DNA of 64,000 nucleotides from positions 141,518-205,517 of IMG/VR virus record IMGVR_UViG_3300030107_006644; one strand, 5' to 3'. The position numbers and the translations under genes were made by a program. Below, piece after piece: positions 39,166 through 58,607 of this stretch (the stretch's first letter is position 1; each line of letters starts with the position of its first letter). A model generated the notes under the pieces. It worked only from the letters and a program-made list of their open reading frames with translations, had not been told where the DNA came from and did not search any database.

Positions 39166-39636
39166 ATGAGTATTTGGTTTACTGGTAGTGGTTATGAAAT
39201 CAAGTTTGACGAAATGGTCAAACAAATTGAACGCCATTTAGGCAAAAACGGCAAACTCTTTATCGGTACTGATTCTTTCTTGACCAAAAAAAGCTGTGTT
39301 TTCGCAACAGCGATATGTCTCCACGGAGCGGATGAGCAATCAGGAGGTATTTATTTTGTTCAAAAGGTTAAAACATCTAACCGACCCTTTCGGCACCTTA
39401 TGTTACGAATCTTGACTGAGGTTGAAAAGACAGTCGACACCGCGCTTAAAATATCCTCGCTATATCCTGAAGCCGATATAGAACTGCATTTGGATATAAG
39501 CGCGTCGAACACCGGTGCTGCAACTGCTAGGTTTTCCGATGCTTTAGCTGGATATGCAAAAAGCACAGGCTTCTCATGCAAACTCAAACCGTACTCATGG
39601 GCCGCAGCTTCTGTGGCCGATAAACATTCAAAATAA
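39166..39636 (+). CDS. RNase H-like YkuK/DUF458 family protein
   Basis: LFIGTDS...LTEVEKT...ELHLDI...KPYSWAAASVADKH. Confidence 0.85.
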   Translation: MSIWFTGSGYEIKFDEMVKQIERHLGKNGKLFIGTDSFLTKKSCVFATAICLHGADEQSGGIYFVQKVKTSNRPFRHLMLRILTEVEKTVDTALKISSLYPEADIELHLDISASNTGAATARFSDALAGYAKSTGFSCKLKPYSWAAASVADKHSK

Positions 39637-40538: not shown

Positions 40539-43500
40539 ATGCGTAAGCCAAAAATTATTAACAATACAGAGGCTGATCACTCTAGCCTTATCGAATTAGC
40601 AAATCACTTTTTTCCTTTTGCTCAAAAGCAGATGGGATTTTCCGAACCCGTCACCATAGTTTTGATCTCAGACGAAGAGAACGGCGCAGACCACTTAGGA
40701 AAAACAGGATATTACAACCCTTCAGACAACAACATAGGATTGTATACTGACAGTAGGCATCCAAAAGATATTTTAAGATCTCTCGCGCATGAGTTGGTGC
40801 ACCATACTCAAAATGGCAAAGGTATGTTTAATTTAGATATCGATCTTGAGCCCGGCTATGCTCAGAATGATGAACATATGCGCGAAATGGAACGTCAAGC
40901 CTATGAGCTTGGGAACATGTGCTTCAGAGACTGGGAAGATAACAACAAAGAAGAGATTCGCAAATGGGATCTTAAGGAATCTATTCGTCAAGAACTTAGA
41001 AAAAGAATGTCTGGAACGCCGGAGATCTTAGAAGAAGGTCCTCGATGGGACAAGTTTAAAGGCGCAATGGGCTCGGCTGGCAAAGGCGTGTGGGGTGGGG
41101 TCAAGGCTGCACCGGGCGCGACTTGGAGAGGGATAAAACATTCTTGGACGGGAGATCCGGTAGCCATGAGTGCAAAACCTGCTCGGGGGCCCAAGGGAGA
41201 GTATATTCCGCGCGGCGGCCCGGGCAAGGAAAAAAAGCAATTTTTCACCGAAGAAGAACAGACCACGAGCGAATTTCCCTCCCCATTTCAGCAAAAAATC
41301 ACTGAAAAGTCTGATGCAGAAGCATGGGCTAAGTGGATTATGGATTTTCAAGAACCAGCTTTAATCAAAAAAGCATTTTATACAGTGATATACGATGAAA
41401 TTCTCGGTAACGATGGGGAACCGGTCAAATTTAAGATGAATAAGAAGCTCGAAATTGCCCAGCATTACACGGCAATGTTTTATGGACCGGATGGGCCCGG
41501 GCACGAAGAGGCACCACCTGCTGAAAGCCCAGTAGAAACTGCAGCAGATACTGCCGATGCCGATGCGGAAGAATCACCAGCAACAGCAGAGGTCGAGGAT
41601 GACTCCAGTATCTATGATGTGTCTAGAGTCATGACGCCCGGTACCGACTATGAAGATCCCATCGAGACAGGATATGGAACTTCCGTAGATGATCCAACTG
41701 CTGGAGGACTTGGTGGAGAGTGGAGAGAGCATAAGGAAATGAACAGTATGAACAAAAAACTCAGTATACGAGAAGAACTAAGACTTCGAAGTCTTATCGC
41801 CGAAGCAACACAGAGAGTAATGCAAAAACAAAGACTGCTGAGGGAGAATTCTCAAGAAGAGTTTGGCACATCTGATGTGACTGTCGACGAGCCCTCTGCA
41901 CACGGAGGTCTTGAAGATCGCGGAGAATGGACAAACCCTGTTACTGATGTTACACATGAAAACACAAGAGATGATGCTGCGGCCGATCTTCAGTTCGACA
42001 CATCGACTGCTTTTGGTACATCGTATACCCAAGGCGCCGGCGGTGCACCAGTAGGAAGCTGGCTAACCAATCCAGCAATGAGACATCCAACGGCATCTTG
42101 GACAGGGAGGCAAGAAAAGATCGCGCGGACCTTAGCCGGCGAGACTGTGACCAATCGCGACGGCAGCGTCTTTGAAATTGGCCGTGGAGATCAGAGGTTC
42201 GTTGATCGTCTGCAAAGCGGCGATTTGATGGGTACCGATTTGGGCATGGTTAGACGTGGAGAACGTATTAATCCAAATGCTTGGCGCGAAGCCTTATTGG
42301 AGGCTGGAGACGTGGGTCGTGCACTTTATGAGCAGCACGATGCCGAAGGCTGGATTAACGAAGGTGAAATTAAAGATTTTTGGCAACCAGCTTACGAAAG
42401 AGAATGGCTGTCGCAATATCGTGCGAACAACGATTATCATCGTGAAAGATTTGCTAGGCAAGAGGGGTTTCAAAGCTGGAACTCCCTGCAGGCTGCTGGT
42501 GGAGCCGACCTGTTTACAGTTACGGCTGAAGATATTGATGCTGAAATGCCTACTCGATTGGAATGGGCACAGCACCACTTAGGGCTTGGAGATATTAAAT
42601 CTGCCTCTGGTGCCGGCGGACTTGCAGGCGATCCTCGATTTGATATGAGGGTTAACCCCAATCTCACACAGCAACAGGCAGAGCGCAATATGCGTATGTG
42701 GGGATATGAGCCGGAATACGTAGATCTTCCCGATGGTAGAAGGATTCCCATGGCTCTGACGAGAGAACAGGCCGACGAACAAATTGCAGAAAACGAGTGG
42801 GGAGTCACCACGTTCTTGCGGCGAAATGTTGCAGATCCAATTGTTCAGGATATCGCTCAACAAGGCCAATTTGCTCACGATGCAATATTGCGCCCGATGT
42901 TTGGCAACGTGCAAAGCGGAGAATTTATACCCCTCTGGGCTGGCTGGGGCCTTGGTGATGATCCTATAAACCAATGGGGCCGGGATGACGTATATGGAAG
43001 CGGCCGTCAGTTCGGCGCATCGATGCCGGGAACATATAGAGATCCTCGAATGCAATCAGTTTATGCAGAATACTATGGTCCAGAAGACGCTCCTAGCGAA
43101 GATATGATTGGAAAAATGAAGCCTATGGATGAATGGAATATTCCCAACAGGGGCGCGGTGATTATGAATTCTCTTAACATGCCCGAATCATGGAAGTATG
43201 CCGCGATGTATTATGGTGGCGGTGCTGCGATGAGAGGTCTTGGGGCTTTGCGCGGCATGCCAGCAGCTGCCGGCGGAGCCGGTGCATCTGGTGGAGGCGC
43301 GGCTGGAGGTTGGCTTGGTGGCTCCGTTCCAAAATGGCTTGGGCAAATTCCCGGGCGAACACCGGGGCTATGGCGAGCACCGGGCGCCGGAGCGGTTGAG
43401 TCAGGCCTTGTTAACCTAGGTTCTCGTTTGGGACCGTGGGGAACAAGGTGGGGAACAACGCTCGGCCGATGGGGAGGATACGGCGCCGGTGCCGGTGCGG

Positions 43501-46355
43501 CCGGTAGTTTGGGAATGGGCGCGCTGGGTGTCGGTGGACATTTTGGAAGAAGCCTGATGGACGACGGGCCCGGGCTCAATCAACTGTTTGGTATCGGAAG
43601 CGGTGTAAATTGGTTAGGAGATCAGTTAGACCCGGGCAGATCGGGCTGGGGAAGAGAAGGTTGGACAAGCGATGCTAATTTTGGCCAACCACAGCCTAAA
43701 TATGAGCGCGATGAAAGCGGTGAATTTGTCAGAGATGAAAGAGGTCGACGAGTAATTGCGCGGGACGAAAACGGACTACCACAATATGAAACAAACGAAG
43801 ACGGAAGTTTAGTTTATGCGCATGATCAGTATCGTTCACTTTTAAGCCAGCCGGTGGGCAACTTGGCCGGGCTTGGAGATACAGAATATCAGCCATGGGA
43901 AAGTCCGTATGAGGCAAGGTGGGCAAGAGAAGCAGATCTTGGCGGAATGGCTGCAGCTTTTAATGCTGAAGATATACAACAAGCGGAGATGGCAACAGGT
44001 TTGCGCGCTGCTGATGCCCAAGTTCAATCATTGGAGACACAACTTCTTGGAATGGCAATGGAAAATGTGGCGGACGCGCCGGCAGATCTTGTTAATCCTG
44101 ATGCTGCCATGGCATTTGCAAGCGACATGGGAGTTGACAACGCTGAAGCTGTCTCGGATCAAGCCCAAGAATATGTAGAGCGAATTGAACGTCTTAAGCA
44201 AAACTATGGATTAACTAATGCTAGCGAAGCTGATGTTGGGCGTGTGTCCGAAGAACAAATGGCCATACTTCAGCAAAATCCGCAAAGTTTAGCAGAGTTT
44301 GAATCTGGAATGTCAGAATTAAGTGCCGGGTGGAATCAGGAAGTGACCGCACTGCTTGGACCTCAAGCAGGAAGAGAGGCCGGCGGCCAATATGCTTTTG
44401 ACTTTGGAGTTACCGGTACGGGTGGAAACCAATATAGAACACCAAATATGTCTCCGGCTGCAATAGAAGATTTACTTATGAACATTTCGTCTAACAGGGT
44501 GTCAAATGGAAACTATACAATACCTTCGGGAATTCCATTGCCAACATTGGAAGTTACCAATGAAAATGGTGAAACAGTGGAAGTTACTGCACATTCAGAC
44601 CCACATCGATGGTGGAACGCTCTTCATCAAATGCAGCAAGAGAGATTTAACAGTAATTTAGATCAGGCAATTGCAGGAGACCTCGATGAAATAATTGGCG
44701 AACGTTCTGCAGCCGGTAGTTTGGCTCGATTTATCACCGGCCAAGATGGCTTCCTAATGACTCAGGGTTCCGAGGCGCCAGTTGAAGCTGGATTGGAACA
44801 GGGCGAACGCGTTGGCCGGCGAGAGATGCTAGAAACCTATTATAATACAAGAGTCGAAGAGCATGTTGCACAGATTACAGAAAACCGGGTTCAACAGATG
44901 GTACAATACGGTAACATGAGTGAAGACGAAGCTCAGCTACAACTTCGTGGTATGCGGGATGAGATCGTAAGAGAAGCAACTGGATATGCTATAGATGATG
45001 TAACATTAAAAAGAATTCTTACTCCTATTCCTCCGAGTAGTCAAGACGGCACTTGGAACCCTCTAGCTGGAATAGGACAGTTTGGGTTAGGTTCTGACAA
45101 TCCCGATTCGGCTGGGCCTGAAGCTGAAGCATTTAACGCCGATATGACTGTCATAGCTATGCTAAGCATGCCTTCTCATAGAGACGCAATTCTGTCCCAC
45201 GAAGATGGTCTTGGAAAAGTTGCACAACTAGCGTGGGATTACGGATTTGCTAAAAACAATCCACAATTTATAGAACAGATTTTGCCCGGACCACAATATG
45301 CACAACTGAGAAGAACAATTTCCATGGCAGCATATAGAAAGTCGCAAACTCTTCTTGCGTGGGATACTGCCGGTGAGGCGACAAATCCGAGAACGGGAGA
45401 AAGGTTGGGTAACATCGATGTTCTTTCAGAAGAATCACAGCAAGCTTTTAGCCGACTCAGGAATATTAACTGGGGACACTTTGGCTTAGTAGAGGGCTCT
45501 GATGGTTCGGCGAATCTGGGCGCATGGAGAGATTACGCTGGAAACGGACATGATCTTGACCGGCTTGGTCCGGTCGGGAACGCCACAGCAACAAATCCTG
45601 ATGGCGAATTAACCGTTAACGCACAAGAAATGGTTGCACTGAATGAAGAGTTTAGCGATCTCAGCGATCTAGACCGACGAACGCCGTTGTATTCTGCTGC
45701 CTACAATGCTTTGCCGGAAGAAACACAAGACAGAATATACCAATATAGCGTAACTAGATCAGATATAATAGGTCGACAATATAAAAGGCGTGGAGAACTC
45801 CTGCAGGACGAAGGGCATGCGATCCCAAGAGCAAGACAAATGGCTGGAGCATATTACGTAGCTAGTTCCGGAGATCCGGTCTTAGATCAATTAAGAGGCG
45901 TAGGGTTCCCATCAGCAGCTATTGCAAATCAGGTTGCATTAAGACTTGTAGGCGGACAACCATTGCAGGACATTCAACTAGCTATAAACCCGGATGGGCG
46001 AGCCGCTGCAGCGATTGAGGCAGGGCGAGGAGATTTGAATGGCCCCATATGGGTAGCAGGGGAAACGCTAGACGAAGCCCGACAAAGTGGACAAACATTG
46101 CTGTGGGCCCCTAATCTTGAAAACTCAGCTGGAATGGGCGGTGCACTACCGCAAGGCGCAACAATCAGATTCGGCAGCAACCAGACGGGAGGCGAAACTA
46201 CGCAAGCTATAGAAGTTCCGCAGGCGCCCGGGGCTGGAGCTAGCGCTGAAGATCAGGCCGAATATCGTCGACAATTGCAAGATGCAGCGCGACAACAGGT
46301 GGGCGCACAGGGAGCCCCTAGACGCAGGGGTCGAGTTGTTGTACCGGCGAGATAA
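40539..46355 (+). CDS. Very large probable virion protein with N-terminal zincin-like (HExxH) domain
   Basis: 1938 aa; HPKDILRSLAHELVHH...MERQAYE; IREELRLRSLIAE helix; Gly-rich middle. Confidence 0.8.
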   Translation: MRKPKIINNTEADHSSLIELANHFFPFAQKQMGFSEPVTIVLISDEENGADHLGKTGYYNPSDNNIGLYTDSRHPKDILRSLAHELVHHTQNGKGMFNLDIDLEPGYAQNDEHMREMERQAYELGNMCFRDWEDNNKEEIRKWDLKESIRQELRKRMSGTPEILEEGPRWDKFKGAMGSAGKGVWGGVKAAPGATWRGIKHSWTGDPVAMSAKPARGPKGEYIPRGGPGKEKKQFFTEEEQTTSEFPSPFQQKITEKSDAEAWAKWIMDFQEPALIKKAFYTVIYDEILGNDGEPVKFKMNKKLEIAQHYTAMFYGPDGPGHEEAPPAESPVETAADTADADAEESPATAEVEDDSSIYDVSRVMTPGTDYEDPIETGYGTSVDDPTAGGLGGEWREHKEMNSMNKKLSIREELRLRSLIAEATQRVMQKQRLLRENSQEEFGTSDVTVDEPSAHGGLEDRGEWTNPVTDVTHENTRDDAAADLQFDTSTAFGTSYTQGAGGAPVGSWLTNPAMRHPTASWTGRQEKIARTLAGETVTNRDGSVFEIGRGDQRFVDRLQSGDLMGTDLGMVRRGERINPNAWREALLEAGDVGRALYEQHDAEGWINEGEIKDFWQPAYEREWLSQYRANNDYHRERFARQEGFQSWNSLQAAGGADLFTVTAEDIDAEMPTRLEWAQHHLGLGDIKSASGAGGLAGDPRFDMRVNPNLTQQQAERNMRMWGYEPEYVDLPDGRRIPMALTREQADEQIAENEWGVTTFLRRNVADPIVQDIAQQGQFAHDAILRPMFGNVQSGEFIPLWAGWGLGDDPINQWGRDDVYGSGRQFGASMPGTYRDPRMQSVYAEYYGPEDAPSEDMIGKMKPMDEWNIPNRGAVIMNSLNMPESWKYAAMYYGGGAAMRGLGALRGMPAAAGGAGASGGGAAGGWLGGSVPKWLGQIPGRTPGLWRAPGAGAVESGLVNLGSRLGPWGTRWGTTLGRWGGYGAGAGAAGSLGMGALGVGGHFGRSLMDDGPGLNQLFGIGSGVNWLGDQLDPGRSGWGREGWTSDANFGQPQPKYERDESGEFVRDERGRRVIARDENGLPQYETNEDGSLVYAHDQYRSLLSQPVGNLAGLGDTEYQPWESPYEARWAREADLGGMAAAFNAEDIQQAEMATGLRAADAQVQSLETQLLGMAMENVADAPADLVNPDAAMAFASDMGVDNAEAVSDQAQEYVERIERLKQNYGLTNASEADVGRVSEEQMAILQQNPQSLAEFESGMSELSAGWNQEVTALLGPQAGREAGGQYAFDFGVTGTGGNQYRTPNMSPAAIEDLLMNISSNRVSNGNYTIPSGIPLPTLEVTNENGETVEVTAHSDPHRWWNALHQMQQERFNSNLDQAIAGDLDEIIGERSAAGSLARFITGQDGFLMTQGSEAPVEAGLEQGERVGRREMLETYYNTRVEEHVAQITENRVQQMVQYGNMSEDEAQLQLRGMRDEIVREATGYAIDDVTLKRILTPIPPSSQDGTWNPLAGIGQFGLGSDNPDSAGPEAEAFNADMTVIAMLSMPSHRDAILSHEDGLGKVAQLAWDYGFAKNNPQFIEQILPGPQYAQLRRTISMAAYRKSQTLLAWDTAGEATNPRTGERLGNIDVLSEESQQAFSRLRNINWGHFGLVEGSDGSANLGAWRDYAGNGHDLDRLGPVGNATATNPDGELTVNAQEMVALNEEFSDLSDLDRRTPLYSAAYNALPEETQDRIYQYSVTRSDIIGRQYKRRGELLQDEGHAIPRARQMAGAYYVASSGDPVLDQLRGVGFPSAAIANQVALRLVGGQPLQDIQLAINPDGRAAAAIEAGRGDLNGPIWVAGETLDEARQSGQTLLWAPNLENSAGMGGALPQGATIRFGSNQTGGETTQAIEVPQAPGAGASAEDQAEYRRQLQDAARQQVGAQGAPRRRGRVVVPAR

Positions 46356-49210: not shown

Positions 49211-49471
49211 ATGAATTACAGCGATTTAAACAAAGTTACTAGAAAATTTCTTATTGGAGAAAATTCCAAGCCCGGAATACACAGCTACATTCAAGCTTTG
49301 AGCGAAACCTTGTCAAAATTCAAGCCCAAAAGCATGCTTGAAAGTCGACGATTAGAAATTGCAAATAGTCAACTAAAAGAAATTAGACGATCTGTTCGAA
49401 AGCTTGAAGAGCAAGTGAACGTGTTGCAAGAGCAACTTAAAGTTCTAGAAGAGGGAACAGATAATAAATGA
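49211..49471 (+). CDS. Coiled-coil hypothetical protein
   Basis: AGGAG SD; heptad C-terminus. Confidence 0.75.
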   Translation: MNYSDLNKVTRKFLIGENSKPGIHSYIQALSETLSKFKPKSMLESRRLEIANSQLKEIRRSVRKLEEQVNVLQEQLKVLEEGTDNK

Positions 49472-52047
49472 GCAAATTAAAGCTTTTACTCGAAGGTGGC
49501 GTTGCTGGTCACTTGGCCCATCTATATGACAATCCTGATCTGACTTTTAACGAAGTAAAATCAATTTTGCGCTCTGCTTCAAATGGCGAGCTTGTCGGCA
49601 CAGAAAAGACGGATGGATACAACATTTATCTAAGTGCTCGACAGGGTGTTGCATTGTACGCTAGAAACAAAGGAGATATGGTTGCTGGTGGCCGAACGTT
49701 GCAGGACTTAAACATGCGACAGTTCGCGGGAGGCCAACAAGTTAAAGATGTATATGTAAAATCTTTCTCAGCATTTCAAAGAATGGTTAGCAGTTTAGAG
49801 CCTAGAGAACAAGCTTTTGTTTTTGGCGCTAATGGTGAGATATTTTACAATACAGAGATTCAGGGCCCGGGCGCATCTAATGTAGTTAATTATGACGCTA
49901 ATATTTTATCGATTCACCGAAGTGGTCACAAGGTCTATGATGCTAAAACAAATAAAGTAGTTGCCATCCCAAAGCCAAGTGATGCTAATTATGCAGATTT
50001 TGCACGTCGATTTCCCAATATCAATATTGAGCGAAGTTCGCATTATCTTGATTCGGTCTTAGATCAGTTTGAAGAGGCCGGACAAGACACAGATTTCACA
50101 GTACGTAGGACGGCCATATTACAGCTTCAGGCTCTTTCTGACGATTCGGCATATCAAGAAGCTATTGAAAAGATGAATACTGCCGGCTTTGGCGGAAATA
50201 TGACTGTCGGAGATTATATAGAAGATAGACTTAAGCATTTATTAGGACAAGATTTGTCCTTTTTCCCCACACAGACCCAGCAAGACATTATTGATAAAAT
50301 TCTTAGCAAAGATGGCGCCAAAAATCTACGACAAATTTACAAAGGACTGCCAACCGATCAGGTTGAGGCAATTAGAGCCTTAGTTTCAAATGGTGGAAAG
50401 TTTATTTCAAAAGCCGTCTCGCCGTTGGAAAACGCAATTCACGATTTCGCAGTAGAGATGCTTAGAGGGCTGGAAAGTGCTTATATTCTCGACAACCAAG
50501 CCGAATTGGAAAGACTGAGACGTGAAGTTCGAACTGCAATTGATCAAATTTCTCAATATGGCGGCCCGGGAGCAACGGAAGCTCATGACATATTAAAGAA
50601 GCAATTACAAAAGCTTAAATCACATAGCAACATTAATTCTGTTGTTGAAGGGTTCGTGTTTGAATACAACGGGCAGAACTATAAATTTACCGGCAACTTT
50701 GCGCCCATAAATCAATTACTAGGCCTGTTTAAGTATGGGCGAGGTACTGCCCCTCCCATCATGGCGCAAGGCAGTCAGCACCTCTCTGAGGCTGTGCAAC
50801 ACACCAACCAACAACAGGCTATGACCTTCACATCTGCGGGTGCTGGGCAAATGCCTCAATCAATTGCTGTGATTCCCGGCGGATTCAAGCCTCCTCACAG
50901 AGGCCATGTTGCAATGGCTAAGCATTTTAACAGTTTAGCTGAAGTTACTCTGATTATTATGGGCCATGGTGCCAAAACCAACAAAAGAACCATCGCTGGT
51001 CAAGAAGTTTCGTTTGATGTCTCCAAAAATCTCTGGTCTCTGATGGGAGATGCAGTGGGTCTTGATGCGTATATAGTGGAGGCTCCACCCGGATCGAATC
51101 CGATGAAGATTGCGTATGAGGTTTTAGAATCTGCTCAGCCGGGTCAAACAATTTACATGGGTGCGGGAGCAAAAGATGCAGAGAGGTTTAGAGGGCAAGC
51201 AGAAGCATATGCTCCAGAAGGCGTCAATTTAGAGGTGGAGCCGTTTCCAGATATTAGACATTCATCTCAATATATGCAATTATTAGAAGCAAATCCAGAA
51301 ATTGCTCAAAATATGCCAAGTATAAAGAATGCCAAAAAGAGGCCAGAAGAGTTGCATGCTTCTGATTTGAGATATGTTGCAGAGCAGGCTATGCAGAATC
51401 CGATAGCCGTAGAGATGTTCAAAGACTTTCTACCTCAAGGAGTCGATGCAGGACAAGTTTTACAATCATTGGGCGTAACGGGTGCACAAGCTCAACCTGA
51501 AGAGATGGCAGAAATGCTTTTTAGAATAGTCGAAGAAACGCTACTGGAACAACCACAACAGCAAGGACCTCCACCGCCCGATTGGGAGTCGCTAGTTAAA
51601 GCTGCGGGGGAAACTACTGGGGCGCCTGTTCAGCAAATCACAATGACGTTGCAAGATATGGCTGGCGCTGTTGGACAAAGCGCGGAAGATATTGGCGCTG
51701 GACTGGATGCACTTGGGGGAGTTGCAGACGCATTAGGAAACCCAGAGGGCCCAGTACAAGGTCCTCTATCACAAATCCCCTCTAGTCTTGAGGGAGTTAT
51801 TGGCGATTTTGCCAAAAGTCACGATAAACAAGTTCAAAAACACAACAGCAACATGCAAACTCAGCAGTTTCTTGATCAGAAAAAGCAAGATTCTGCAGCT
51901 ATAGCAGAAATTTCCGCTGCTGGTGGTGGAGCGGTTGCTGGCTTTGCTGCTAAAGCTGAAGATGATGAAGATCAAGAGCCGACTATATTTCGCGAGGAAA
52001 TGATAGAAGAAGTTTTGAATTATTTATTACAAAGACGCATAAACTAA
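49468..52047 (+). CDS. Fusion of a ligase-like covalent nucleotidyltransferase domain and a HIGH-motif (cytidylyltransferase-like) domain
   Basis: TEKTDG (KxDG), FYNTEI, VEGFVF, YKF; AVIPGGFKPPHRGH. Confidence 0.75.
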   Translation: MSKLKLLLEGGVAGHLAHLYDNPDLTFNEVKSILRSASNGELVGTEKTDGYNIYLSARQGVALYARNKGDMVAGGRTLQDLNMRQFAGGQQVKDVYVKSFSAFQRMVSSLEPREQAFVFGANGEIFYNTEIQGPGASNVVNYDANILSIHRSGHKVYDAKTNKVVAIPKPSDANYADFARRFPNINIERSSHYLDSVLDQFEEAGQDTDFTVRRTAILQLQALSDDSAYQEAIEKMNTAGFGGNMTVGDYIEDRLKHLLGQDLSFFPTQTQQDIIDKILSKDGAKNLRQIYKGLPTDQVEAIRALVSNGGKFISKAVSPLENAIHDFAVEMLRGLESAYILDNQAELERLRREVRTAIDQISQYGGPGATEAHDILKKQLQKLKSHSNINSVVEGFVFEYNGQNYKFTGNFAPINQLLGLFKYGRGTAPPIMAQGSQHLSEAVQHTNQQQAMTFTSAGAGQMPQSIAVIPGGFKPPHRGHVAMAKHFNSLAEVTLIIMGHGAKTNKRTIAGQEVSFDVSKNLWSLMGDAVGLDAYIVEAPPGSNPMKIAYEVLESAQPGQTIYMGAGAKDAERFRGQAEAYAPEGVNLEVEPFPDIRHSSQYMQLLEANPEIAQNMPSIKNAKKRPEELHASDLRYVAEQAMQNPIAVEMFKDFLPQGVDAGQVLQSLGVTGAQAQPEEMAEMLFRIVEETLLEQPQQQGPPPPDWESLVKAAGETTGAPVQQITMTLQDMAGAVGQSAEDIGAGLDALGGVADALGNPEGPVQGPLSQIPSSLEGVIGDFAKSHDKQVQKHNSNMQTQQFLDQKKQDSAAIAEISAAGGGAVAGFAAKAEDDEDQEPTIFREEMIEEVLNYLLQRRIN

Positions 52048-52072: not shown

Positions 52073-52969
52073 ATGGATCGAAAAACGTTTTTAGAAGAAT
52101 TGCAGCTTCGTCAGCAGATTCGCGAAGTCATTCAAATCGTGTATCGAAGAAAGGCTGCTAAAGTGCTCTCGGAAGAAAGGGTGTTGCGAAGCTGTATTCG
52201 TAAACTTATTCAAGAAGTTGTCGATGCTGAGCCCGCCTCTAACCCGAATAGATCGACAGGTATCACCGTTTTAGATGAAGAGGTCCTGCAGAATATTATT
52301 CCAATTTTTAAGAAATATTACATGCAGTTAGACAATGCAGAAAAACGAGAGTCTTTTCGCTCTCACATCATTAACGCGGCAGAGAATCTGCTAAGTACAA
52401 TCGGTTCTGGTCAAGAAGAAGGTGGAGAAACTGCACTGGCGGCTGCTCCCGAAGAACCTGAAGTGGAGCCGTTAGCTGAACAAGACGTTTCTATGAACGT
52501 TTCACCAAAAGACGATCCCATGTTCATTCCCGTAGAGGATGACAAGCCAGATCCGGAAACAGCTGAAAGAGATGAATTTAGAACCGGAATGGACGGAGAA
52601 TTATCGCCAGATCAAGAAGTGGGAGCACTCAGGGCTCAAACCGCATTCAACGGACCTGACACTACTATCAAAAAGGCTTATAAAGATTTGCGTGGAGAAG
52701 ACGCAGCATTGTTTGGCGAATATTTGATTACCAACCTCAAATTGCACTTCGATGCAATGGAAGAGGAAATTAGTATGACTCCGGAGCCCACGACCCCATC
52801 ATACGAAGAGGCGGCTGCAGAAATGGGTGGAGAGGTTGCGCCACCTGATGATATGGGCGCTGCGCCGCCCGTGGATGCTCCGATGGATGCTGGGCCACCT
52901 GCCGATATGGGTGCACCCGCTGGGGCTCCTATACCTCCTGAAGAGGGTGCTATGCCGCCGGGCATGTAA
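52073..52969 (+). CDS. Probable virion-associated acidic protein
   Basis: LEELQLRQQIREVI, LRSCIRKLIQE helices; NPNRSTGI; P/A/M/D tail. Confidence 0.75.
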   Translation: MDRKTFLEELQLRQQIREVIQIVYRRKAAKVLSEERVLRSCIRKLIQEVVDAEPASNPNRSTGITVLDEEVLQNIIPIFKKYYMQLDNAEKRESFRSHIINAAENLLSTIGSGQEEGGETALAAAPEEPEVEPLAEQDVSMNVSPKDDPMFIPVEDDKPDPETAERDEFRTGMDGELSPDQEVGALRAQTAFNGPDTTIKKAYKDLRGEDAALFGEYLITNLKLHFDAMEEEISMTPEPTTPSYEEAAAEMGGEVAPPDDMGAAPPVDAPMDAGPPADMGAPAGAPIPPEEGAMPPGM

Positions 52970-53043
52970 AAAGATCATTTTTCTGAGAGATTTACTTAAA
53001 ATCCGAAATATTATGTGCTATTTTGGGAGGGTAGGTGGTTTTA

Positions 53044-53424
53044 ATGAGTTGGAAACGAAAAAGAAGACTTCAAGGAAGTAATAAATACTATAGCATATCC
53101 AACAAACTGAAAAGAGAAAAGAAAATCTCAGATGACTTTGAAGTAATGCTTAACAATTTAGACTTAGAAGAAGTCATAGGTCTTAAGCTAGAGTTAGCCT
53201 CCCGTGCAGCTGGGGGTAAACTATTTGGAATCTGTATATGGAATTCTTTAACAGATGTTATTAGGGATGCTATATTTAAATATGCTCTCTCAGCAACTCG
53301 TTCAAAACGAGAGGCTGCTACCTTTTTAGGTATTGACATTCAGACGTTTTATAGATTACAGAACTACTATGGTTCAGAAACTTATTTTAAAGAAGAGAAG
53401 GACGCCCATGGGGAAATAACGTAA
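53044..53424 (+). CDS. Fis-like (HTH_8) DNA-binding protein
   Basis: YALSATRSKREAATFLGIDIQTFYRL. Confidence 0.7.
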   Translation: MSWKRKRRLQGSNKYYSISNKLKREKKISDDFEVMLNNLDLEEVIGLKLELASRAAGGKLFGICIWNSLTDVIRDAIFKYALSATRSKREAATFLGIDIQTFYRLQNYYGSETYFKEEKDAHGEIT

Positions 53425-53557: not shown

Positions 53558-54154
53558 ATGAAAGCAACATTAATTAAGGCAATGCTGTGTGGAATGTTCC
53601 TCACTGCATGCAGTGCGTGTACACCAGAAATAGAAAGCGAGTCACCTTCGAATACAGATAGTGAAGTGGTAGTGGATAAACACCCATGGGCTACTTGGGA
53701 AGATTGCAGTCAAGTGCCCGGAGCACATCCATGCAATTTTGAACTCATGGACCAGAATGGAGAAATGGTAGAGCTTTACGATCAATATGAAAAGGTTATA
53801 GTAATTGATTTATCAGCTATGTGGTGTGGAGTTTGCAACAACATAGCAACGATGGGAGACCAATTCGTATCAGATTATGGTTCTGAGAATGTGGTTTGGT
53901 TAACCGTGCTGATTGATGACAGCACTGGAAATCCACCAGATTTAGCAGATCTGCAGCATTGGGCTGAAACATACAATATATCAGGACCAGTACTGGGCGC
54001 AGATAGGACCCTGATTGACCAAACTGCACAAACAGGATATCCAGTAACTTCTTGGCCAACTTTAGTAGTGGTTGATAAGCAAATGGTTATGCAATACGGT
54101 ATATATGGATGGAGCGAAAGCGTTGTTCGTGGCTGGGTTGAGAGTTTACTATAA
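53558..54154 (+). CDS. TlpA/redoxin-like thioredoxin-fold lipoprotein
   Basis: DLSAMWCGVC, SWPTLVVVD; lipobox-like LTAC. Confidence 0.85.
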   Translation: MKATLIKAMLCGMFLTACSACTPEIESESPSNTDSEVVVDKHPWATWEDCSQVPGAHPCNFELMDQNGEMVELYDQYEKVIVIDLSAMWCGVCNNIATMGDQFVSDYGSENVVWLTVLIDDSTGNPPDLADLQHWAETYNISGPVLGADRTLIDQTAQTGYPVTSWPTLVVVDKQMVMQYGIYGWSESVVRGWVESLL

Positions 54155-54411
54155 TGTGGAAAGTATATGCATGGAACGGAAGATTTATACAAGGTGACTT
54201 GGTAAGTAAACACTCCTCAGAATCTGCTGCTCTTAAAGCAGCAAAAAAATCAATAGGATATAAAAAAAATACCAAAGAAACAAAAAAGGGTGAAATACTT
54301 ATTTGGTTAGATAATGAAGATGGTACGCCCATGGGAGTTATCGTGAAAAAAACCAAAGTAGAAGAAATAAGGGGACGAAAAAGGATTCGACAGGGTAAGA
54401 AAAAGGAATAG
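54154..54411 (+). CDS. Basic hypothetical protein; 3' end overlaps the tmRNA 5' end
   Basis: 85 aa; TAATG coupling to the upstream gene. Confidence 0.6.
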   Translation: MWKVYAWNGRFIQGDLVSKHSSESAALKAAKKSIGYKKNTKETKKGEILIWLDNEDGTPMGVIVKKTKVEEIRGRKRIRQGKKKE

Positions 54412-54707
54412 TGCAAGTAGGTTAGATACGGCCTTAACAGTTCAAAAACAATAGTTGCAAATAACAACAATCACTTCGATTCTGTTCGCTTAGCGGCTTA
54501 ATCGGGAGGTCGCTCAAAACCTTCTATCCAATTTGGGCAAAAACAACAGACAAGTTGTAAAAATCAACAAATTTATCGCAATAGGATGGTAAGCGATATC
54601 TGAACGCCATCTATATTTGTCAGTAGCTGATAGAAACTGACTAAACTTGTGAATGACTACAGTTGGACTTATTGTGGACGCGGGTTCGATTCCCGCCGTC
54701 TCCACCA
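54371..54707 (+). ncRNA. ssrA: tmRNA; tag (A)NNNNHFDSVRLAA at 54457-54501
   Basis: 5' GGGGACG...GGATTCGAC; 3' GCGGGTTCGATTCCCGC CGTCTCC ACCA; acceptor pairing with G-U; tag ends LAA-stop. Confidence 0.95.
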
Positions 54708-56025: not shown

Positions 56026-56268
56026 ATGGATCCAAATAAGGAAAACAACAAGTCTTGGAAAAAGGCAGGCTACTTTAGTACATATGAGGAAGCTCAAACT
56101 AAGAAAACGCAACTTCACGCCGAACATACGGTTGATAATGAGCTTGTAGTTAAGATACGCCGCAGCGGACCCGGCGGTACGCGTTTTACGGTCAAGTATT
56201 GGCATCCCGACTTTGTAAAGCCTAAAAACAAAAAGAAGAATAAGCGCCCCGATAGCTCAGCTGGATAG
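56026..56268 (+). CDS. Basic hypothetical protein; 3' end overlaps tRNA-Arg
   Basis: GAGG SD; 80 aa. Confidence 0.65.
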   Translation: MDPNKENNKSWKKAGYFSTYEEAQTKKTQLHAEHTVDNELVVKIRRSGPGGTRFTVKYWHPDFVKPKNKKKNKRPDSSAG

Positions 56269-56322
56269 AGCATCGGCCTTCTAAGCCGAGGGTCGTAGGT
56301 TCGAATCCTACTCGGGGTACCA
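56246..56322 (+). tRNA. tRNA-Arg(TCT)
   Basis: Canonical cloverleaf; loop CT-TCT-AA; encoded CCA. Confidence 0.95.
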
Positions 56323-56336
56323 TTTACGAGGAGAAT

Positions 56337-56951
56337 ATGAAAGATATTTATTGGTTAAAATCATCAACTGAAGACGAAGAAGAAGGTCCGAGTGCTAGCT
56401 CAAGCGACGACAACAATATAGTTTCCAGTCTAAATAACAACATCTACTTCTATTCAGAAGTAACTAGAGCTAAAAACTTGCAGCTAAATAAAAAACTGAT
56501 GACTTTGGGAGTTTCATTGGTTAACCGAAGCAATTCGCTTGGAGCATCACCACCACCGCCGATTAATTTGCATATTAACAGCTATGGAGGCAGTCTTTTT
56601 GCCGGATTTTCATCTGTTGATTATGTATTAAACTGTCCTGTGCCAGTTCATTCAGTTATTGATGGCTGTGCTGCATCTGCAGCCACACTCTTTAGCGTTG
56701 TCGCAGAGAGGAGATTCATGCATAAGCACTCGTTTATGTTGATTCACCAGCTTTCTTCTGGAATGTGGGGAAATTATGAATCACTTAAAGATGATATGGA
56801 GAATTGCGATCTGCTGATGGAAACAATTCGAACTATTTATAGCGACCATACTAAAATTCCCAAGAAGATGCTCAATCAAATTTTGAAAAGAGATTTGTGG
56901 TTCGATGCGGAAACGTGTTTAAAGCATGGTTTGGTCGATGAAATTATTTAA
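56337..56951 (+). CDS. clpP: ClpP-like protease
   Basis: HINSYGGSLFAG, CAASAAT, MLIHQLS, RDLWFDAE.CL..GLVDEI. Confidence 0.9.
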   Translation: MKDIYWLKSSTEDEEEGPSASSSDDNNIVSSLNNNIYFYSEVTRAKNLQLNKKLMTLGVSLVNRSNSLGASPPPPINLHINSYGGSLFAGFSSVDYVLNCPVPVHSVIDGCAASAATLFSVVAERRFMHKHSFMLIHQLSSGMWGNYESLKDDMENCDLLMETIRTIYSDHTKIPKKMLNQILKRDLWFDAETCLKHGLVDEII

Positions 56952-57069
56952 AATATCGGATAGAATATTTGACATTGTAACATTCGTAGGCATAGGGTTG
57001 TCTATTGGCATTATTGTTTTAAATTTACAATGTTTACTTACCTGCACACAACATTAAGGAGAAAATGAT

Positions 57070-57588
57070 TTGGCGCATCATTACGGTGATTTTATGAGAA
57101 AAAGAAAATATATTATGGTTTCTGGTGGGTTTGACCCTATTCACGTTGGACATGTACGCATGATTCAAGAAGCTGCTCGCCATGGCGATGGGCTTTATGT
57201 TGTCTTGAATAGTGATGATTGGCTTCTTCGCAAGAAAGGGTACATCTTTATGCCATTTGAGGAACGCGCTGAGATTATAAATGCAATTAGTGGTGTCACG
57301 GCCGTGATTCCGGTAGATGATTCAGATAACACCGTGTGTGAGGCCCTACGCAGAGTAAAGCCAGATTGTTTCGCCAACGGCGGTGATAGGACCAATAAAA
57401 ATACTCCTGAAATGCAAGTTTGCGAAGAATTGGACATTGAGATGATTTGGAATATAGGCGGCGGAAAGATTCAAAGTAGCAGCGAACTTGTAGCTAATTC
57501 CAACATTGTTGAAAGTAGAGAAAACACAAATCGTACTGAAACACAGCAAGTCGACTTATTTGAACATTGGTCGCTAGATCGAACATAA
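57070..57588 (+). CDS. Cytidylyltransferase-like (HIGH) protein, glycerol-3-P CT/RfaE-like
   Basis: SGGFDPIHVGH, LNSD..L.RKKG, FANGGDR, KIQSSS. Confidence 0.9.
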   Translation: MAHHYGDFMRKRKYIMVSGGFDPIHVGHVRMIQEAARHGDGLYVVLNSDDWLLRKKGYIFMPFEERAEIINAISGVTAVIPVDDSDNTVCEALRRVKPDCFANGGDRTNKNTPEMQVCEELDIEMIWNIGGGKIQSSSELVANSNIVESRENTNRTETQQVDLFEHWSLDRT

Positions 57589-57593
57589 ACCAC

Positions 57594-57622
57594 TTGACTT
57601 CAGCCCTATAATAGGGTATATT
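57594..57622 (+). promoter_or_regulatory. Single sigma70-type promoter for tRNA-Leu
   Basis: TTGACT-17-TATATT. Confidence 0.75.
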
Positions 57623-57630
57623 ATAAGTGA

Positions 57631-57715
57631 GGCTGAGTGGTGGAATCGGTATACACAGGAGACTTAAAATCTCCCGCCTTAAGGCTTGCGGGTTCGAGTC
57701 CCGCCTCAGCTACCA
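57631..57715 (+). tRNA. tRNA-Leu(TAA)
   Basis: Class II cloverleaf; loop CT-TAA-AA; CCA. Confidence 0.95.
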
Positions 57716-57731
57716 TTTTACAGGAAAATAA

Positions 57732-57920
57732 ATGCTTTTACTAATATTGCTAGCTTATAATCACGGACAACCAGAGTTACCACAATGTACTATTGATCGG
57801 TGCGAAGCGCAATATTGCGTAGTAGAGACACCGGAAGGAAGTGTTGATGTTTCACGAAAACCTCACTACAGAGAGGGTATGTTAATTGAGTGTCCTTTTT
57901 GGCTAATTGATCCGACTTAA
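57732..57920 (+). CDS. Small secreted Cys-containing protein
   Basis: CTIDRCE...C.VETPEG...EG..IECP. Confidence 0.65.
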   Translation: MLLLILLAYNHGQPELPQCTIDRCEAQYCVVETPEGSVDVSRKPHYREGMLIECPFWLIDPT

Positions 57921-57923
57921 ATA

Positions 57924-58050
57924 CGCTGCTCCCGTACAGCAGATGAAGTGGCGTTCCTCTAACGATATGCAGGCCATCATAGGGAAGTTGACATAGATTG
58001 CATTACACGGTCTGTGAAACTATCCACGAAATTGGTGCTGGGGAGCAAGC
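57924..58050 (+). ncRNA. Candidate structured RNA abutting the tRNA-Lys 5' end
   Basis: Long irregular closing stem GCTCCC/GGGAGC, CAGCA/TGCTG, GTGG/CCAC; no credible ORF. Confidence 0.45.
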
Positions 58051-58125
58051 GGGTCAATAGCTCAATGGTAGAGCACCGGGCTTTTAACCCGTAGGCTCTG
58101 GGTTCGAATCCCAGTTGACCCACCA
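58051..58125 (+). tRNA. tRNA-Lys(TTT)
   Basis: Canonical cloverleaf; loop CT-TTT-AA; CCA. Confidence 0.95.
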
Positions 58126-58152
58126 TTGAAGAGAATATGAGAAGATTAATAC

Positions 58153-58227
58153 GCGAATGTAGCTCAGTGGTAGAGCCCCACGTTGCCAACGTGGCTGTCG
58201 CTGGTTCGAATCCAGTCATTCGCTCCA
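58153..58227 (+). tRNA. tRNA-Gly(GCC)
   Basis: Canonical cloverleaf; loop TT-GCC-AA; U73; CCA. Confidence 0.95.
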
Positions 58228-58331: not shown

Positions 58332-58607
58332 ATGAAATATAAAGTAAATGATGTAGTGTTGGTTAAGTCTCCTGCGGGGAATGCAATTCCGCATATACAT
58401 GTTAAATTACTTAAAAGAATTGTGGTAAAAGCTAGCAAGGGTAGGAGCATGGATTGGCCCGGCTATTCTGGCTGGGAAGCGACTCCTGTCTATCAAAAAG
58501 AAATTGATATTCTTCGTAAAAAATGGAGCATTCCCTTTACTAAGCCGGAAAAAGACTTGACATTTGTCTATGACCGAGATATACTACATAAGGAGAAGAA
58601 AAAATGA
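58332..58607 (+). CDS. SH3/KOW-like hypothetical protein
   Basis: MKYKVNDVVLV...VKLLKR. Confidence 0.65.
   Translation: MKYKVNDVVLVKSPAGNAIPHIHVKLLKRIVVKASKGRSMDWPGYSGWEATPVYQKEIDILRKKWSIPFTKPEKDLTFVYDRDILHKEKKK

What the first reader, a model, noticed from the sequence alone, without database searches (positions are those of the whole stretch)
49468..52047. Ligase-like KxDG domain fused to a HIGH nucleotidyltransferase, with a possible virion-processing N-terminus
Seen: motifs resembling covalent nucleotidyltransferase I (TEKTDG), III (NTEI), IV (EGFV) and V (YKF), then GGFKPPHRGH; it starts MSKLKLLLE and has further LxE sites between domains. Established: T4 Rnl/Pnk repair tRNAs cut by host anticodon nucleases, and HIGH enzymes include NMN adenylyltransferases used by phages against NAD depletion. 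Inference: an injected two-enzyme counter-defence (RNA repair plus NAD or other nucleotide-cofactor synthesis).
Basis: partly seen in the sequence, partly recalled or inferred. Interest (0 to 1): 0.6.

Follow-up and report, generated by a model that had tools for sequence, protein, structure and literature searches.

The report
Ligase-like plus NMNAT-like phage fusion enzyme
This gene of a 205-kb T4-like marine phage encodes one protein joining a divergent RNA-ligase-type enzyme to an NMNAT/PPAT-type adenylyltransferase, the fused form of a gene pair conserved in marine T4-like cyanophages, and its biological job is still unknown.

Summary

**N-domain (residues 10-426).** It matches no Pfam, PHROG or PDB sequence. 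Its AlphaFold model (pLDDT 86.9) finds RNA ligases first in two structure searches (Rnl5, Rnl2, Rnl1, REL1; Z about 7, about 180 residues). It has a roughly 230-aa helical insert and no OB or Rnl-specific accessory domain. Structure and language-model searches place it next to Pfam DUF6267; sequence statistics do not.

**C-domain (about 462-700).** It is a PPAT/NMNAT-type HIGH adenylyltransferase (Z 12.8) with both signature motifs intact.

**Coupling.** The two modules are fused in both orders, and in cyanomyoviruses they are adjacent genes with overlapping stop and start codons.

**Virion idea.** Support is indirect:
- the genome encodes T4-type capsid protein and gp21-type protease;
- [LI]-x-E precedes each module;
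- cyanophage stand-alone HIGH homologues carry a T4 capsid-targeting-like leader, and NMNAT-like or 'cytidylyltransferase' proteins were detected in four cyanophage virion proteomes.

tRNA repair plus NAD rescue lacks its partners: no polynucleotide kinase, no Nampt, and no other ligase was found. Verdict: a new variant of known enzyme kinds with the physiological role open.

The parts
49468..52047 (+). Whole gene, 859 aa: ligase-like domain, linker, HIGH adenylyltransferase domain, low-complexity tail
49468..49494 (+). 9-residue N-terminal leader MSKLKLLLE, ending L-L-E directly before the invariant GG. Candidate gp21-type propeptide, or simply the start of the domain.
   Evidence: 85 of 121 homologues have a 7-24 aa leader, always ending [LI]-x-E. 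36 of 121 start at M-GG.
49495..49533 (+). Invariant N-terminal block GGVAGHLAHLYDN. Family hallmark of unknown role, modelled with low confidence.
   Evidence: Lines up with THLEHLEDD of DUF6267 in a relaxed, sub-threshold alignment.
49600..49617 (+). Motif I, TEKTDG. K47 is the predicted nucleotidyl-accepting lysine.
   Evidence: Invariant K47, D49, G50. Strand-loop-strand in the model. Aligned ranges place it level with the motif I lysine of Rnl2, Rnl1 and Rnl5.
49660..49677 (+). Motif Ia-like ARNKGD (invariant A65, R66, N67)
49843..49917 (+). Motif III (FYNTEIQGPG, invariant E130) and the motif IIIa region (NYDANILSIH)
49960..50637 (+). Mostly helical insert of about 230 residues between motifs IIIa and IV. 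No informative structural match.
50644..50745 (+). Motif IV (VEGFVFE; E394, G395), motif V (YKFTGN; K406, with invariant Thr408 where ligases usually have a second Lys), and the closing conserved helix FAPINQLLGLFKYGRG
50746..50850 (+). Interdomain linker with L-S-E followed by A at residues 439-442. Candidate protease site about 30 residues upstream of the HIGH motif.
   Evidence: [LI]-x-E is in the linker of 82 of 115 members, against 43 expected from shuffles.
50851..51567 (+). HIGH-superfamily adenylyltransferase domain (PPAT/NMNAT type) with GGFKPPHRGH (50878-50907) and LHASDLR (51352-51372)
51568..52044 (+). A/G/Q/E/D/P-rich tail ending in the conserved motif IAE-ISAAGGGAVAGF (51901-51945), an acidic run, FREE, and a short amphipathic end
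   Evidence: The motif is in 94 of 121 homologues and is always preceded by [LIMV]-x-E.
49211..49471 (+). Conserved upstream partner: 86-aa coiled-coil protein whose stop overlaps the target's start
   Evidence: 50-53% identity to the equivalent gene in two distant loci. Coiled-coil-type Pfam hits only.
52073..52969 (+). Conserved downstream partner: 298-aa acidic, Pro-rich protein whose N-terminus MDRKTFLEE resembles a capsid-targeting leader
   Evidence: 31-37% identity in three distant loci. E9 invariant. No family match.
53035..53424 (+). Conserved downstream 129-aa protein with a weak helix-turn-helix signal
   Evidence: 48-57% identity in two distant loci. Weak HTH hits.

Best explanation
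The gene encodes two nucleotidyl-transfer enzymes in one chain.

**Residues 10-426.** A very divergent member of the ATP-dependent ligase/capping (covalent lysyl-NMP) superfamily, closest in shape to RNA ligases. It belongs to the same lineage as Pfam DUF6267. Inferred chemistry: K47 attacks the alpha-phosphate of ATP to form enzyme-AMP. The AMP passes to a 5'-phosphate polynucleotide end, which is then sealed or left adenylylated.

**Residues about 462-700.** A PPAT/NMNAT-type HIGH adenylyltransferase. Inferred chemistry: it joins AMP from ATP to a phosphorylated small molecule. NMN giving NAD+ is the leading candidate, and phosphopantetheine or another phospho-metabolite remains possible.

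**Coupling (shown).** The two modules work as a unit. They are fused in both orders in different phages. In T4-like cyanophages they are neighbouring, translationally overlapping genes (DUF6267 followed by 'cytidylyltransferase').

**Delivery (inferred).** The protein is probably loaded into the prohead, trimmed by the phage's gp21-type protease at [LI]-x-E boundaries, and delivered with the DNA, so it would act at the very start of infection.

Shown here: the folds, the intact catalytic motifs, the coupling and the T4-type head machinery. Inferred: the substrates, packaging and cleavage of this particular protein, and the biological target.
For: **N-domain fold**
- AlphaFold model: pLDDT 86.9, pTM 0.81.
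- Foldseek's top hits are all RNA or DNA ligases.
- VIA re-alignment: Z 7.1 to Naegleria Rnl5 (179 residues), 7.0 to T4 Rnl2, 6.9 to T4 Rnl1, 6.6 to TbREL1. The first 39 rows are all covalent nucleotidyltransferases.
- The same ranking came from an unbiased scan of 48,161 chains.
- Motifs I, Ia, III, IV and V are invariant and in canonical order.

**Link to DUF6267**
- Atlas clusters carrying PF19782 share the fold (TM 0.63/0.73 over 304 residues, rmsd 2.8). One 654-aa cluster carries both PF19782 and PF01467.
- The language-model search puts DUF6267 clusters nearest (0.97; 24 of 30 hits).
- Hallmark motifs are co-linear.

**C-domain**
- Profile against PDB: archaeal NMNAT MJ0541 at 1.3e-6, plus many PPATs.
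- Model pLDDT 88.9.
- Z 12.8 to E. coli PPAT over 153 of 159 residues, and Z 12.6 to NadM NMNAT.

**Coupling**
- Mel-JY01 has the reverse order, HIGH then ligase-like (hhalign 2.8e-35).
- In cyanomyovirus contigs and in S-SZBM1, DUF6267 sits directly upstream of CTP_transf_like, with overlapping stop and start codons in the metagenomic contigs.
- S-SZBM1_140 matches the C-domain profile.

**Packaging**
- gp23-type capsid protein and gp21-type protease are present.
- [LI]-x-E lies at all boundaries.
- The cyanophage leader MRFxxF[IL]xE-A resembles the T4 capsid-targeting sequence.
- Virion proteomes: PMC9146016, PMC10665884, PMC9602691.
Against: - Z of about 7 is only middling, and no sequence method links the N-domain to any ligase family or to DUF6267. 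There were no Pfam hits, no PDB profile hits, and hhalign gave E 0.05-0.07.
- Motif V has one lysine, not two (Thr408).
- No residue-level superposition could be inspected.
- The HIGH domain scores below Pfam's gathering cut-off in this protein (15.4 against 21 bits).
- The fold does not discriminate NMNAT from PPAT.
- Packaging is inferred from homologues about 20% identical.
- 36 of 121 members have no leader.
- The cyanophage DUF6267 protein is not mentioned anywhere in the S-SZBM1 paper, including its virion table.
- [LI]-x-E is depleted in the N-domain (0.63x) but not in the HIGH domain (1.28x), against a genome background of 1.22x.
Confidence: 0.6

Rival explanations
1. One reading: an injected counter-defence pair. 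The ligase reseals tRNAs cut by host anticodon nucleases, and the HIGH domain is an NMNAT that restores NAD+ after NADase defences fire.
For: - The fold is RNA-ligase-like and NMNAT-like.
- NMNAT-like proteins recur in cyanophage virions.
- Phage NAD salvage through NadV plus NadM or NadR is established (PMC9503650).
Against: - No Pnk-type kinase is present to heal 5'-OH and cyclic-phosphate ends.
- No Nampt/NAPRTase is present to make NMN. [quoted passage not shown]
- There is no Rnl1-type tRNA-binding domain.
- PPAT fits the HIGH domain as well as NMNAT does.
Confidence: 0.2
2. It is the phage's missing DNA ligase. The ligase-like domain would seal Okazaki fragments or nicks in phage DNA. 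It might use NAD+ made on the spot by the fused NMNAT-type domain, with the invariant H-L-x-H-L-Y-D block playing the NMN-contacting role of LigA domain Ia.
For: - No ATP-dependent or NAD-dependent DNA ligase is detectable in this complete 205-kb genome.
- No ATP-dependent ligase is detectable in S-SZBM1, Mel-JY01 or immuto.
- The DUF6267 plus HIGH pair recurs across marine cyanomyovirus contigs.
- A cofactor-making partner would explain the obligatory coupling.
Against: - There is no OB domain or motif VI after motif V.
- RNA ligases score slightly above DNA ligases.
- Many phages simply use the host's LigA.
- Virion packaging of the HIGH partner fits a replication role poorly.
- The domain Ia analogy is my inference only.
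Confidence: 0.13
3. The ligase-like module has mainly a morphogenetic role, as T4 RNA ligase 1 (gp63) also promotes tail-fibre attachment. The fusion would be an assembly factor or minor virion component, not an enzyme acting in the host.
For: - Phage RnlA is annotated 'RNA ligase 1 and tail fiber attachment catalyst' among the structural matches (row 34).
- The genome lacks a canonical RnlA.
- Neighbours of the cyanophage pair, S-SZBM1_139 and _136, are virion proteins.
Against: Every catalytic residue of both modules is invariant across a family only 41-53% identical overall, which argues for retained enzymatic activity.
Confidence: 0.07
4. As database names suggest, the HIGH domain is a cytidylyltransferase making CDP-glycerol or a similar envelope precursor, and the N-domain is unrelated to nucleic acids.
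For: - There is a weak Pfam CTP_transf_like match.
- Cyanophage papers annotate the homologue by analogy with TagD.
Against: - The best profile and structure matches are NMNAT and PPAT across the full domain. TagD aligns over only 110 residues.
- A separate canonical small CTP_transf_like gene lies 5 kb downstream.
Confidence: 0.05

Closest known systems
ATP-dependent RNA ligases (T4 Rnl2, T4 Rnl1, Naegleria Rnl5, Trypanosoma REL1)
   Same: - The nucleotidyltransferase core fold is shared (Z 6.6-7.1, about 180-190 aligned residues).
- Motif I KxDG lysine and motifs III, IV and V are in the same order.
   Different: - Identity is about 12-15%, and no sequence-profile match exists.
- A helical insert of about 230 aa lies between motifs IIIa and IV.
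- None of the accessory domains that define Rnl1, Rnl2, Rnl3 or Rnl5 is present.
- Motif V has a single lysine.
- There is an extra invariant N-terminal GGVAGHLxHLYDN block.
- It is fused to a HIGH adenylyltransferase.
Pfam DUF6267 (PF19782), uncharacterized protein of T4-like cyanophages (e.g. S-SZBM1_141)
   Same: - The predicted fold is shared (Atlas TM 0.63/0.73).
- It is the nearest family by language-model features (0.97).
- Hallmark motifs are co-linear (HLxHLxD, KxDG, EGFV...K).
- It has the same partnership with a CTP_transf_like enzyme.
   Different: - The Pfam model does not hit this protein, and profile-profile E is 0.05-0.07.
- DUF6267 is a stand-alone protein of about 397 aa, whereas here the module is fused.
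Cyanomyovirus virion-associated 'cytidylyltransferase'/NMNAT-like proteins (S-SZBM1_140, S-CREM2 ORF154, S-SCSM1 ORF91)
   Same: - S-SZBM1_140 belongs to the same HIGH subfamily, with G-x-F-x-P-P-H-x-G-H and L-S-A-S-x-x-R (hhalign 3.9e-6).
- It occupies the same position downstream of the ligase-like module.
- An [IL]-x-E site lies about 25-30 residues upstream of the HIGH motif.
- S-CREM2 ORF154 and S-SCSM1 ORF91 are grouped here from the papers' annotation and their stated similarity (39.8% identity between the S-SCSM1 NMNAT and a cyanophage cytidylyltransferase). I did not compare their sequences.
   Different: - Identity to S-SZBM1_140 is about 20%.
- The cyanophage proteins are separate genes of about 360 aa with their own N-terminal leader and a different C-terminal half.
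- Virion presence has not been measured for this family.
NadM/NadR and archaeal NMNAT; bacterial PPAT (CoaD)
   Same: The Rossmann-type HIGH fold is shared over the whole enzyme (Z 12.6-12.8), along with the HxGH and ISxxxR-type motifs.
   Different: - Identity is 12-16%.
- There is no Nudix or kinase partner domain.
- No Nampt is present in the genome.
- The acceptor substrate is unknown.
T4 capsid-targeted internal proteins (IPI-III, Alt)
   Same: - There is a short N-terminal leader ending [LI]-x-E.
- A gp21-type protease is in the genome.
- A C-terminal segment is also preceded by [LIMV]-x-E, and Alt is trimmed at both ends.
   Different: - There is no sequence homology to the IPs or Alt.
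- The leader is absent in 36 of 121 members.
- No proteomic data exist for this family.

Membership tests
Covalent nucleotidyltransferase superfamily (ATP-dependent ligases and capping enzymes) | Motif I K-x-D/N/H-G with the nucleotidyl-accepting lysine | tested here: met
   TEKTDG at residues 45-50. K47, D49 and G50 are invariant in 25 sequences and present in Mel-JY01.
Covalent nucleotidyltransferase superfamily (ATP-dependent ligases and capping enzymes) | Motifs III, IIIa, IV and V in canonical order | tested here: met
   E130, E394-G395 and K406 are invariant. One deviation: motif V has Thr408 at the usual second-lysine position.
Covalent nucleotidyltransferase superfamily (ATP-dependent ligases and capping enzymes) | Nucleotidyltransferase domain fold | tested here: met
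   All top matches in three searches belong to this superfamily, at Z up to 7.1. Z is middling, so this is met at fold level, not with high statistical weight.
Covalent nucleotidyltransferase superfamily (ATP-dependent ligases and capping enzymes) | Formation of a covalent enzyme-NMP intermediate | not testable with these tools
   Needs a labelling assay with a K47A control.
DNA ligases / mRNA capping enzymes | C-terminal OB-fold domain with motif VI | tested here: not met
   After motif V there is one helix (411-423), then the linker. DNA ligases and capping enzymes score lower (Z 4.5-6.1).
Rnl1, Rnl2, Rnl3 or Rnl5 RNA ligase families | Family-specific accessory domain and a match to the family's sequence model | tested here: not met
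   No Pfam RNA_ligase or other ligase hit. The aligned ranges cover only the nucleotidyltransferase core.
Pfam DUF6267 (PF19782) | Score over the Pfam gathering cut-off | tested here: not met
   No hit at E up to 10. Profile-profile E is 0.05-0.07.
Pfam DUF6267 (PF19782) | Shared fold and genomic partnership with CTP_transf_like | tested here: met
   Atlas TM 0.63/0.73. Language-model score 0.97. Adjacency and fusion.
HIGH nucleotidyltransferases (Pfam CTP_transf_like, PF01467) | H-x-G-H motif at the end of the first strand | tested here: met
   PPHRGH at 475-480. H480 is invariant and H477 is present in 90% or more.
HIGH nucleotidyltransferases (Pfam CTP_transf_like, PF01467) | Second nucleotide-binding motif of the I-S-S-T-x-x-R type | tested here: met
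   LHASDLR at 629-635. A631 and R635 are invariant in the C-domain alignment.
HIGH nucleotidyltransferases (Pfam CTP_transf_like, PF01467) | Rossmann-type fold | tested here: met
   Z 12.8 to PPAT over 153 of 159 residues. Profile E 1.3e-6 to NMNAT.
HIGH nucleotidyltransferases (Pfam CTP_transf_like, PF01467) | Score over the Pfam gathering cut-off | tested here: not met
   15.4 bits against a cut-off of 21 for this protein. 14 of 25 relatives match at E of 0.01 or better.
NMN adenylyltransferase (NAD salvage) | Activity on NMN or NaMN; companion Nampt/NadV in phage NAD-salvage systems | tested here: inconclusive
   No NAPRTase-family gene is in the genome. Fold similarity to NMNAT and to PPAT is tied. 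Activity cannot be tested here.
T4-type capsid-targeted, protease-processed internal proteins | gp21-family prohead protease and gp23-type head in the same genome | tested here: met
   PF03420 at 2.9e-31. PF07068 at 1.9e-71.
T4-type capsid-targeted, protease-processed internal proteins | N-terminal propeptide of about 10 residues ending [L/I]-x-E | tested here: inconclusive
   Present in this protein and in 85 of 121 relatives, always ending [LI]-x-E. Absent in 36 of 121.
T4-type capsid-targeted, protease-processed internal proteins | Presence in purified virions and cleavage at the predicted sites | not testable with these tools
   Evidence exists only for distant cyanophage HIGH-type proteins.

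The most novel reading that the evidence does not exclude
The pair is a capsid-delivered nucleic-acid end-modifying machine of a kind not yet described. The NMNAT-type module would make NAD+ or a related dinucleotide that the ligase-like module uses as its nucleotidyl donor. Alternatively, the two together would place an adenylyl or NAD-type cap on the ends of the injected genome or of RNAs. Either way, the ends would be protected or sealed in the first moments of infection in marine T4-like phages, which lack any recognisable DNA ligase.
Probability: 0.12. Interest if true: 0.85.

Novelty: new variant of a known kind. Interest (0 to 1): 0.58.

Why it matters
Neither has an assigned function. 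I found no paper mentioning DUF6267, and no survey describing a ligase fused to a HIGH enzyme.

This work gives three things:
- the DUF6267 lineage can now be read as a ligase-type lysyl-nucleotidyl transferase;
- it is obligatorily coupled to an NMNAT/PPAT-type enzyme;
- both modules have concrete, cheap biochemical assays.

It may also explain why an 'NMNAT-like' enzyme keeps turning up inside cyanophage particles. If the pair is injected with the DNA, it would be a new class of immediate-early phage enzyme in some of the most abundant viruses in the ocean.

Tried and rejected
- **Sequence-only identification of the N-domain failed.** Pfam and PHROGs gave nothing. PDB searches by phmmer and by profile gave nothing relevant.
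- **N-domain profile against DUF6267 is sub-threshold.** hhalign gave E 0.07. A more diverse query profile in relaxed mode gave a co-linear full-length alignment, but only E 0.048. The link therefore rests on structure, language-model features, motifs and synteny.
- **HMM search of the S-SZBM1 genome with the N-domain profile found nothing**.
- **Flavobacterium phage immuto's 907-aa 'NadR' protein** shares only the HIGH domain. It has no ligase-like part and no Pfam hit.
- **The downstream neighbour is not detectably related to the virion protein S-SZBM1_139**.
- **[LI]-x-E depletion as a signature of protease exposure gave mixed results.** The N-domain is depleted and the HIGH domain is not, so I give it little weight.
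- **My regular expression did not locate the ligase motif in the two huge-phage homologues**, and I did not pursue them.
- **Not run:**
  - The exhaustive representative search, because its 150-row list would be filled by close relatives.
  - Complex prediction, because I do not claim the modules bind as separate chains.
  - The sequencing-read tools, which were not needed.


Full report
**1.

The ORF runs 49468..52047 on the + strand and encodes 859 aa.
- TEKTDG, residues 45-50
- NTEI inside FYNTEIQGPG, 126-135
- EGFV, 394-397
- YKF, 405-407
- GGFKPPHRGH, 471-480
- the start MSKLKLLLE
- an L-S-E in the linker, 439-441

A word search found more than 862 homologues, from marine metagenomes as far as sources are named, on contigs up to about 200 kb. 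I aligned 25 of them, sharing only 41-53% identity. The predicted catalytic residues K47, D49, G50, R66, E130, E394, G395, K406, H480 and R635 are invariant, and H477 is in 90% or more. So is an unexplained N-terminal block, GGVAGHLxHLYDN.

**2. The genome**

The window is the last 64 kb of a 205,517-bp virus record rated 100% complete. Nearly all genes lie on one strand. The head machinery is T4-type:
- a Gp23-family capsid protein (PF07068, 1.9e-71)
- a gp21-family prohead protease (PF03420, 2.9e-31)
- a T4-type portal and large terminase

The nearest terminase relatives are Flavobacterium phage immuto (45%), Microcystis phage Mel-JY01 (41%) and a huge uncultured phage, followed by T4-like cyanophages.

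**3. The N-terminal domain**

No sequence method names it.

An AlphaFold model of residues 1-430, built from 21 homologues, is confident (pLDDT 86.9, pTM 0.81). Only residues 1-16 are poorly defined.

Three structure searches agree on the fold:
- Foldseek's best PDB matches are all RNA or DNA ligases, but with weak E-values.
- Re-alignment gives Z 7.1 to Naegleria Rnl5, 7.0 to T4 Rnl2, 6.9 to T4 Rnl1 and 6.6 to TbREL1 over about 170-190 residues. The first 39 rows are all covalent nucleotidyltransferases.
- A scan of 48,161 representative chains that does not use Foldseek gives the same order.

Z of about 7 is middling on its own. The case rests on three things together: the unanimous family of the top hits, the invariant motifs in canonical order, and aligned ranges that put K47 and K406 level with the motif I and motif V lysines of Rnl2, Rnl1 and Rnl5.

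It differs from known ligases in five ways:
- a helical insert of about 230 residues between motifs IIIa and IV
- no OB domain
- none of the accessory domains that define Rnl1, Rnl2, Rnl3 or Rnl5
- Thr408 where motif V usually has a second lysine
- the extra N-terminal H-L-x-H-L-Y-D block

**4. The C-terminal domain**

A profile of the domain hits archaeal NMNAT MJ0541 (1.3e-6) and many PPATs.

Its model (pLDDT 88.9) aligns to a whole PPAT at Z 12.8 (153 of 159 residues). It aligns to NadM NMNAT at Z 12.6.

Both signature motifs are intact: PPHRGH and LHASDLR.

The fold cannot say whether the acceptor is NMN, phosphopantetheine or something else.

**5. The two modules are a conserved pair**

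- In Mel-JY01 the order is reversed: HIGH domain at 31-135, ligase-like domain at 235-638 (hhalign 2.8e-35).
- Viral structure libraries hold many 600-990-aa phage proteins that combine this fold with CTP_transf_like. Stand-alone forms of 390-450 aa also exist.
- In cyanophage S-SZBM1 the annotated 'cytidylyltransferase' (gene 140) matches the C-domain profile.
- The S-SZBM1 gene immediately upstream (141) is a full-length Pfam DUF6267 (3.7e-130). It shows HLEHLEDD, VKWDG, GDLLY and EGFVAIKDG..KLV in the same order as the N-domain's motifs.
- In other cyanomyovirus contigs, DUF6267 is likewise followed by CTP_transf_like, with overlapping stop and start codons.

The link between the N-domain and DUF6267 has mixed support. 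Profile-profile comparison is not significant. Three other lines do place them together:
- Atlas clusters bearing DUF6267 share the fold (TM 0.63/0.73).
- One Atlas cluster carries both Pfam families.
- The language-model search ranks DUF6267 clusters first (0.97).

I found no paper mentioning DUF6267 or DUF5661. The two broad surveys of phage RNA-repair and NAD systems do not describe a ligase-HIGH fusion.

**6. Virion loading and processing**

Evidence for:
- Purified virions of S-SZBM1 contained the 'cytidylyltransferase' as their only enzyme (PMC9146016).
- S-CREM2 virions contained its cytidylyltransferase (PMC10665884).
- S-SCSM1 and S-CBWM1 virions contained an NMNAT. The S-SCSM1 authors remark on how often NMNAT-like proteins appear in cyanophage virions (PMC9602691).
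- All cyanophage HIGH proteins I read begin MRFxxF[IL]xE followed by Ala. That is the pattern of the T4 capsid-targeting sequence MKTYQEFIAE (PMC8442874). In that sequence residues 4 and 7 drive targeting, and residues 8 and 10 drive cleavage by gp21 after Glu. The packaged enzyme Alt is trimmed at both ends (PMC9026906).
- In the fused family, every leader that exists ends [LI]-x-E (85 of 85).
- Every conserved C-terminal motif is preceded by [LIMV]-x-E (94 of 94).
- The linker carries [LI]-x-E in 82 of 115 members, against 43 expected from shuffles.
- Mel-JY01 has MGKLINILLSE at its start and IIAE-GG at the domain junction. So each module is preceded by such a site whichever way round they are fused.

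Evidence against:
- 36 of 121 members start directly at M-GG. I verified this in the DNA of one of them.
- The cyanophage DUF6267 protein is not mentioned in the S-SZBM1 paper, including its virion-proteome table.
- [LI]-x-E is depleted in the N-domain but not in the HIGH domain.
- The homology to the detected cyanophage proteins is distant.

I put packaging of this protein at roughly even odds.

**7. Biological role**

- no Pnk-type kinase
- no Nampt/NAPRTase
- no canonical RNA ligase

The genome also has no recognisable DNA ligase of either class. S-SZBM1, Mel-JY01 and immuto likewise have no ATP-dependent one. That keeps alive the idea that this lineage is the missing ligase, perhaps using NAD+ from its partner. 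However, it has no OB domain and looks slightly more like RNA ligases.

**8. Neighbourhood**

Three small genes travel with the target in distant relatives:
- an 86-aa coiled-coil protein whose stop overlaps the target's start
- a 298-aa acidic, Pro-rich protein with a leader-like N-terminus
- a 129-aa HTH-like protein

None has a known family.

**9. Verdict**

This is a real, strongly conserved, probably doubly active fusion enzyme. It is a new variant within two known enzyme superfamilies. It gives the first structural reading of the DUF6267 lineage. The physiological substrate is open, and virion delivery is plausible but unproven.

Noticed in passing
window 54371-54707 and 56246-58227: A phage-encoded tmRNA (tag peptide ANNNNHFDSVRLAA) followed by tRNA-Arg(tct), tRNA-Leu(taa), tRNA-Lys(ttt) and tRNA-Gly(gcc), about 2-6 kb downstream of the target.
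   Followed up: no
window 57070-57588: A second, canonical small CTP_transf_like gene (172 aa, Pfam 3.9e-14) lies 5 kb downstream. A relative (locus L017) also has a 144-aa one about 3 kb downstream of its fusion gene.
   Followed up: partly
whole genome G000 (205,517 bp): No ATP-dependent or NAD-dependent DNA ligase, no canonical RNA ligase, no Nampt and no Pnk-type kinase were detected in a genome rated complete.
   Followed up: partly
window 52073-52969: The conserved downstream 298-aa protein starts MDRKTFLEE (family consensus ..EFLEE, E9 invariant), which resembles the T4 capsid-targeting sequence. It ends in a Pro/Ala/Gly/Met-rich tail. It may be another packaged protein.
   Followed up: partly
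window 26000-32000: A stretch with higher GC (0.54-0.56 against about 0.45) and near-zero GC skew. It holds an AAA-type ATPase (29324-30391) and a phrog_1314 'HNH endonuclease' family protein (30478-31707). It may be a recently acquired island.
   Followed up: no
window 53558-54154: An AhpC/thioredoxin-fold protein (Pfam 8.1e-10) with an N-terminus that looks like a lipoprotein signal (MKATLIKAMLCGMFLTACSAC), which is unusual for a phage redox protein.
   Followed up: no
window 1-1332, 39166-39636, 56337-56951, 58604-59119, 59119-59694, 61765-63078: Auxiliary genes in the window: GroEL-like chaperonin, RNaseH-like protein, ClpP-like protease, pyrimidine-dimer glycosylase, SpoU-type RNA methylase and PhoH.
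   Followed up: no
window 4153-9393 and 12266-13081: A 1746-aa protein with a C-terminal M23 peptidase domain, and a 271-aa trypsin-like protease. The two largest ORFs in the window after it (1938 aa at 40539-46355, 1066 aa at 35934-39134) have no family match.
   Followed up: no
G000 87606-89516 (locus L007:7606-9513): The major capsid protein is 636 aa. The best Gp23 match covers residues 351-620 and the best major-head PHROG match covers 304-613, so there is a long N-terminal extension of about 300 residues.
   Followed up: no
locus L029 (LR756508.1), ORF from about 2578, 919 aa: The huge-phage homologue carries an extra N-terminal segment with a DGHHRW motif, reminiscent of ParB/sulfiredoxin-type domains, ahead of its HIGH motif.
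   Followed up: no
G000 869-11464 (locus L003): The start of the genome holds two glycosyltransferases, a multidomain protein with a phosphoheptose-isomerase segment, and a nucleotide-sugar epimerase. This suggests a phage-encoded heptose or sugar-nucleotide pathway.
   Followed up: no
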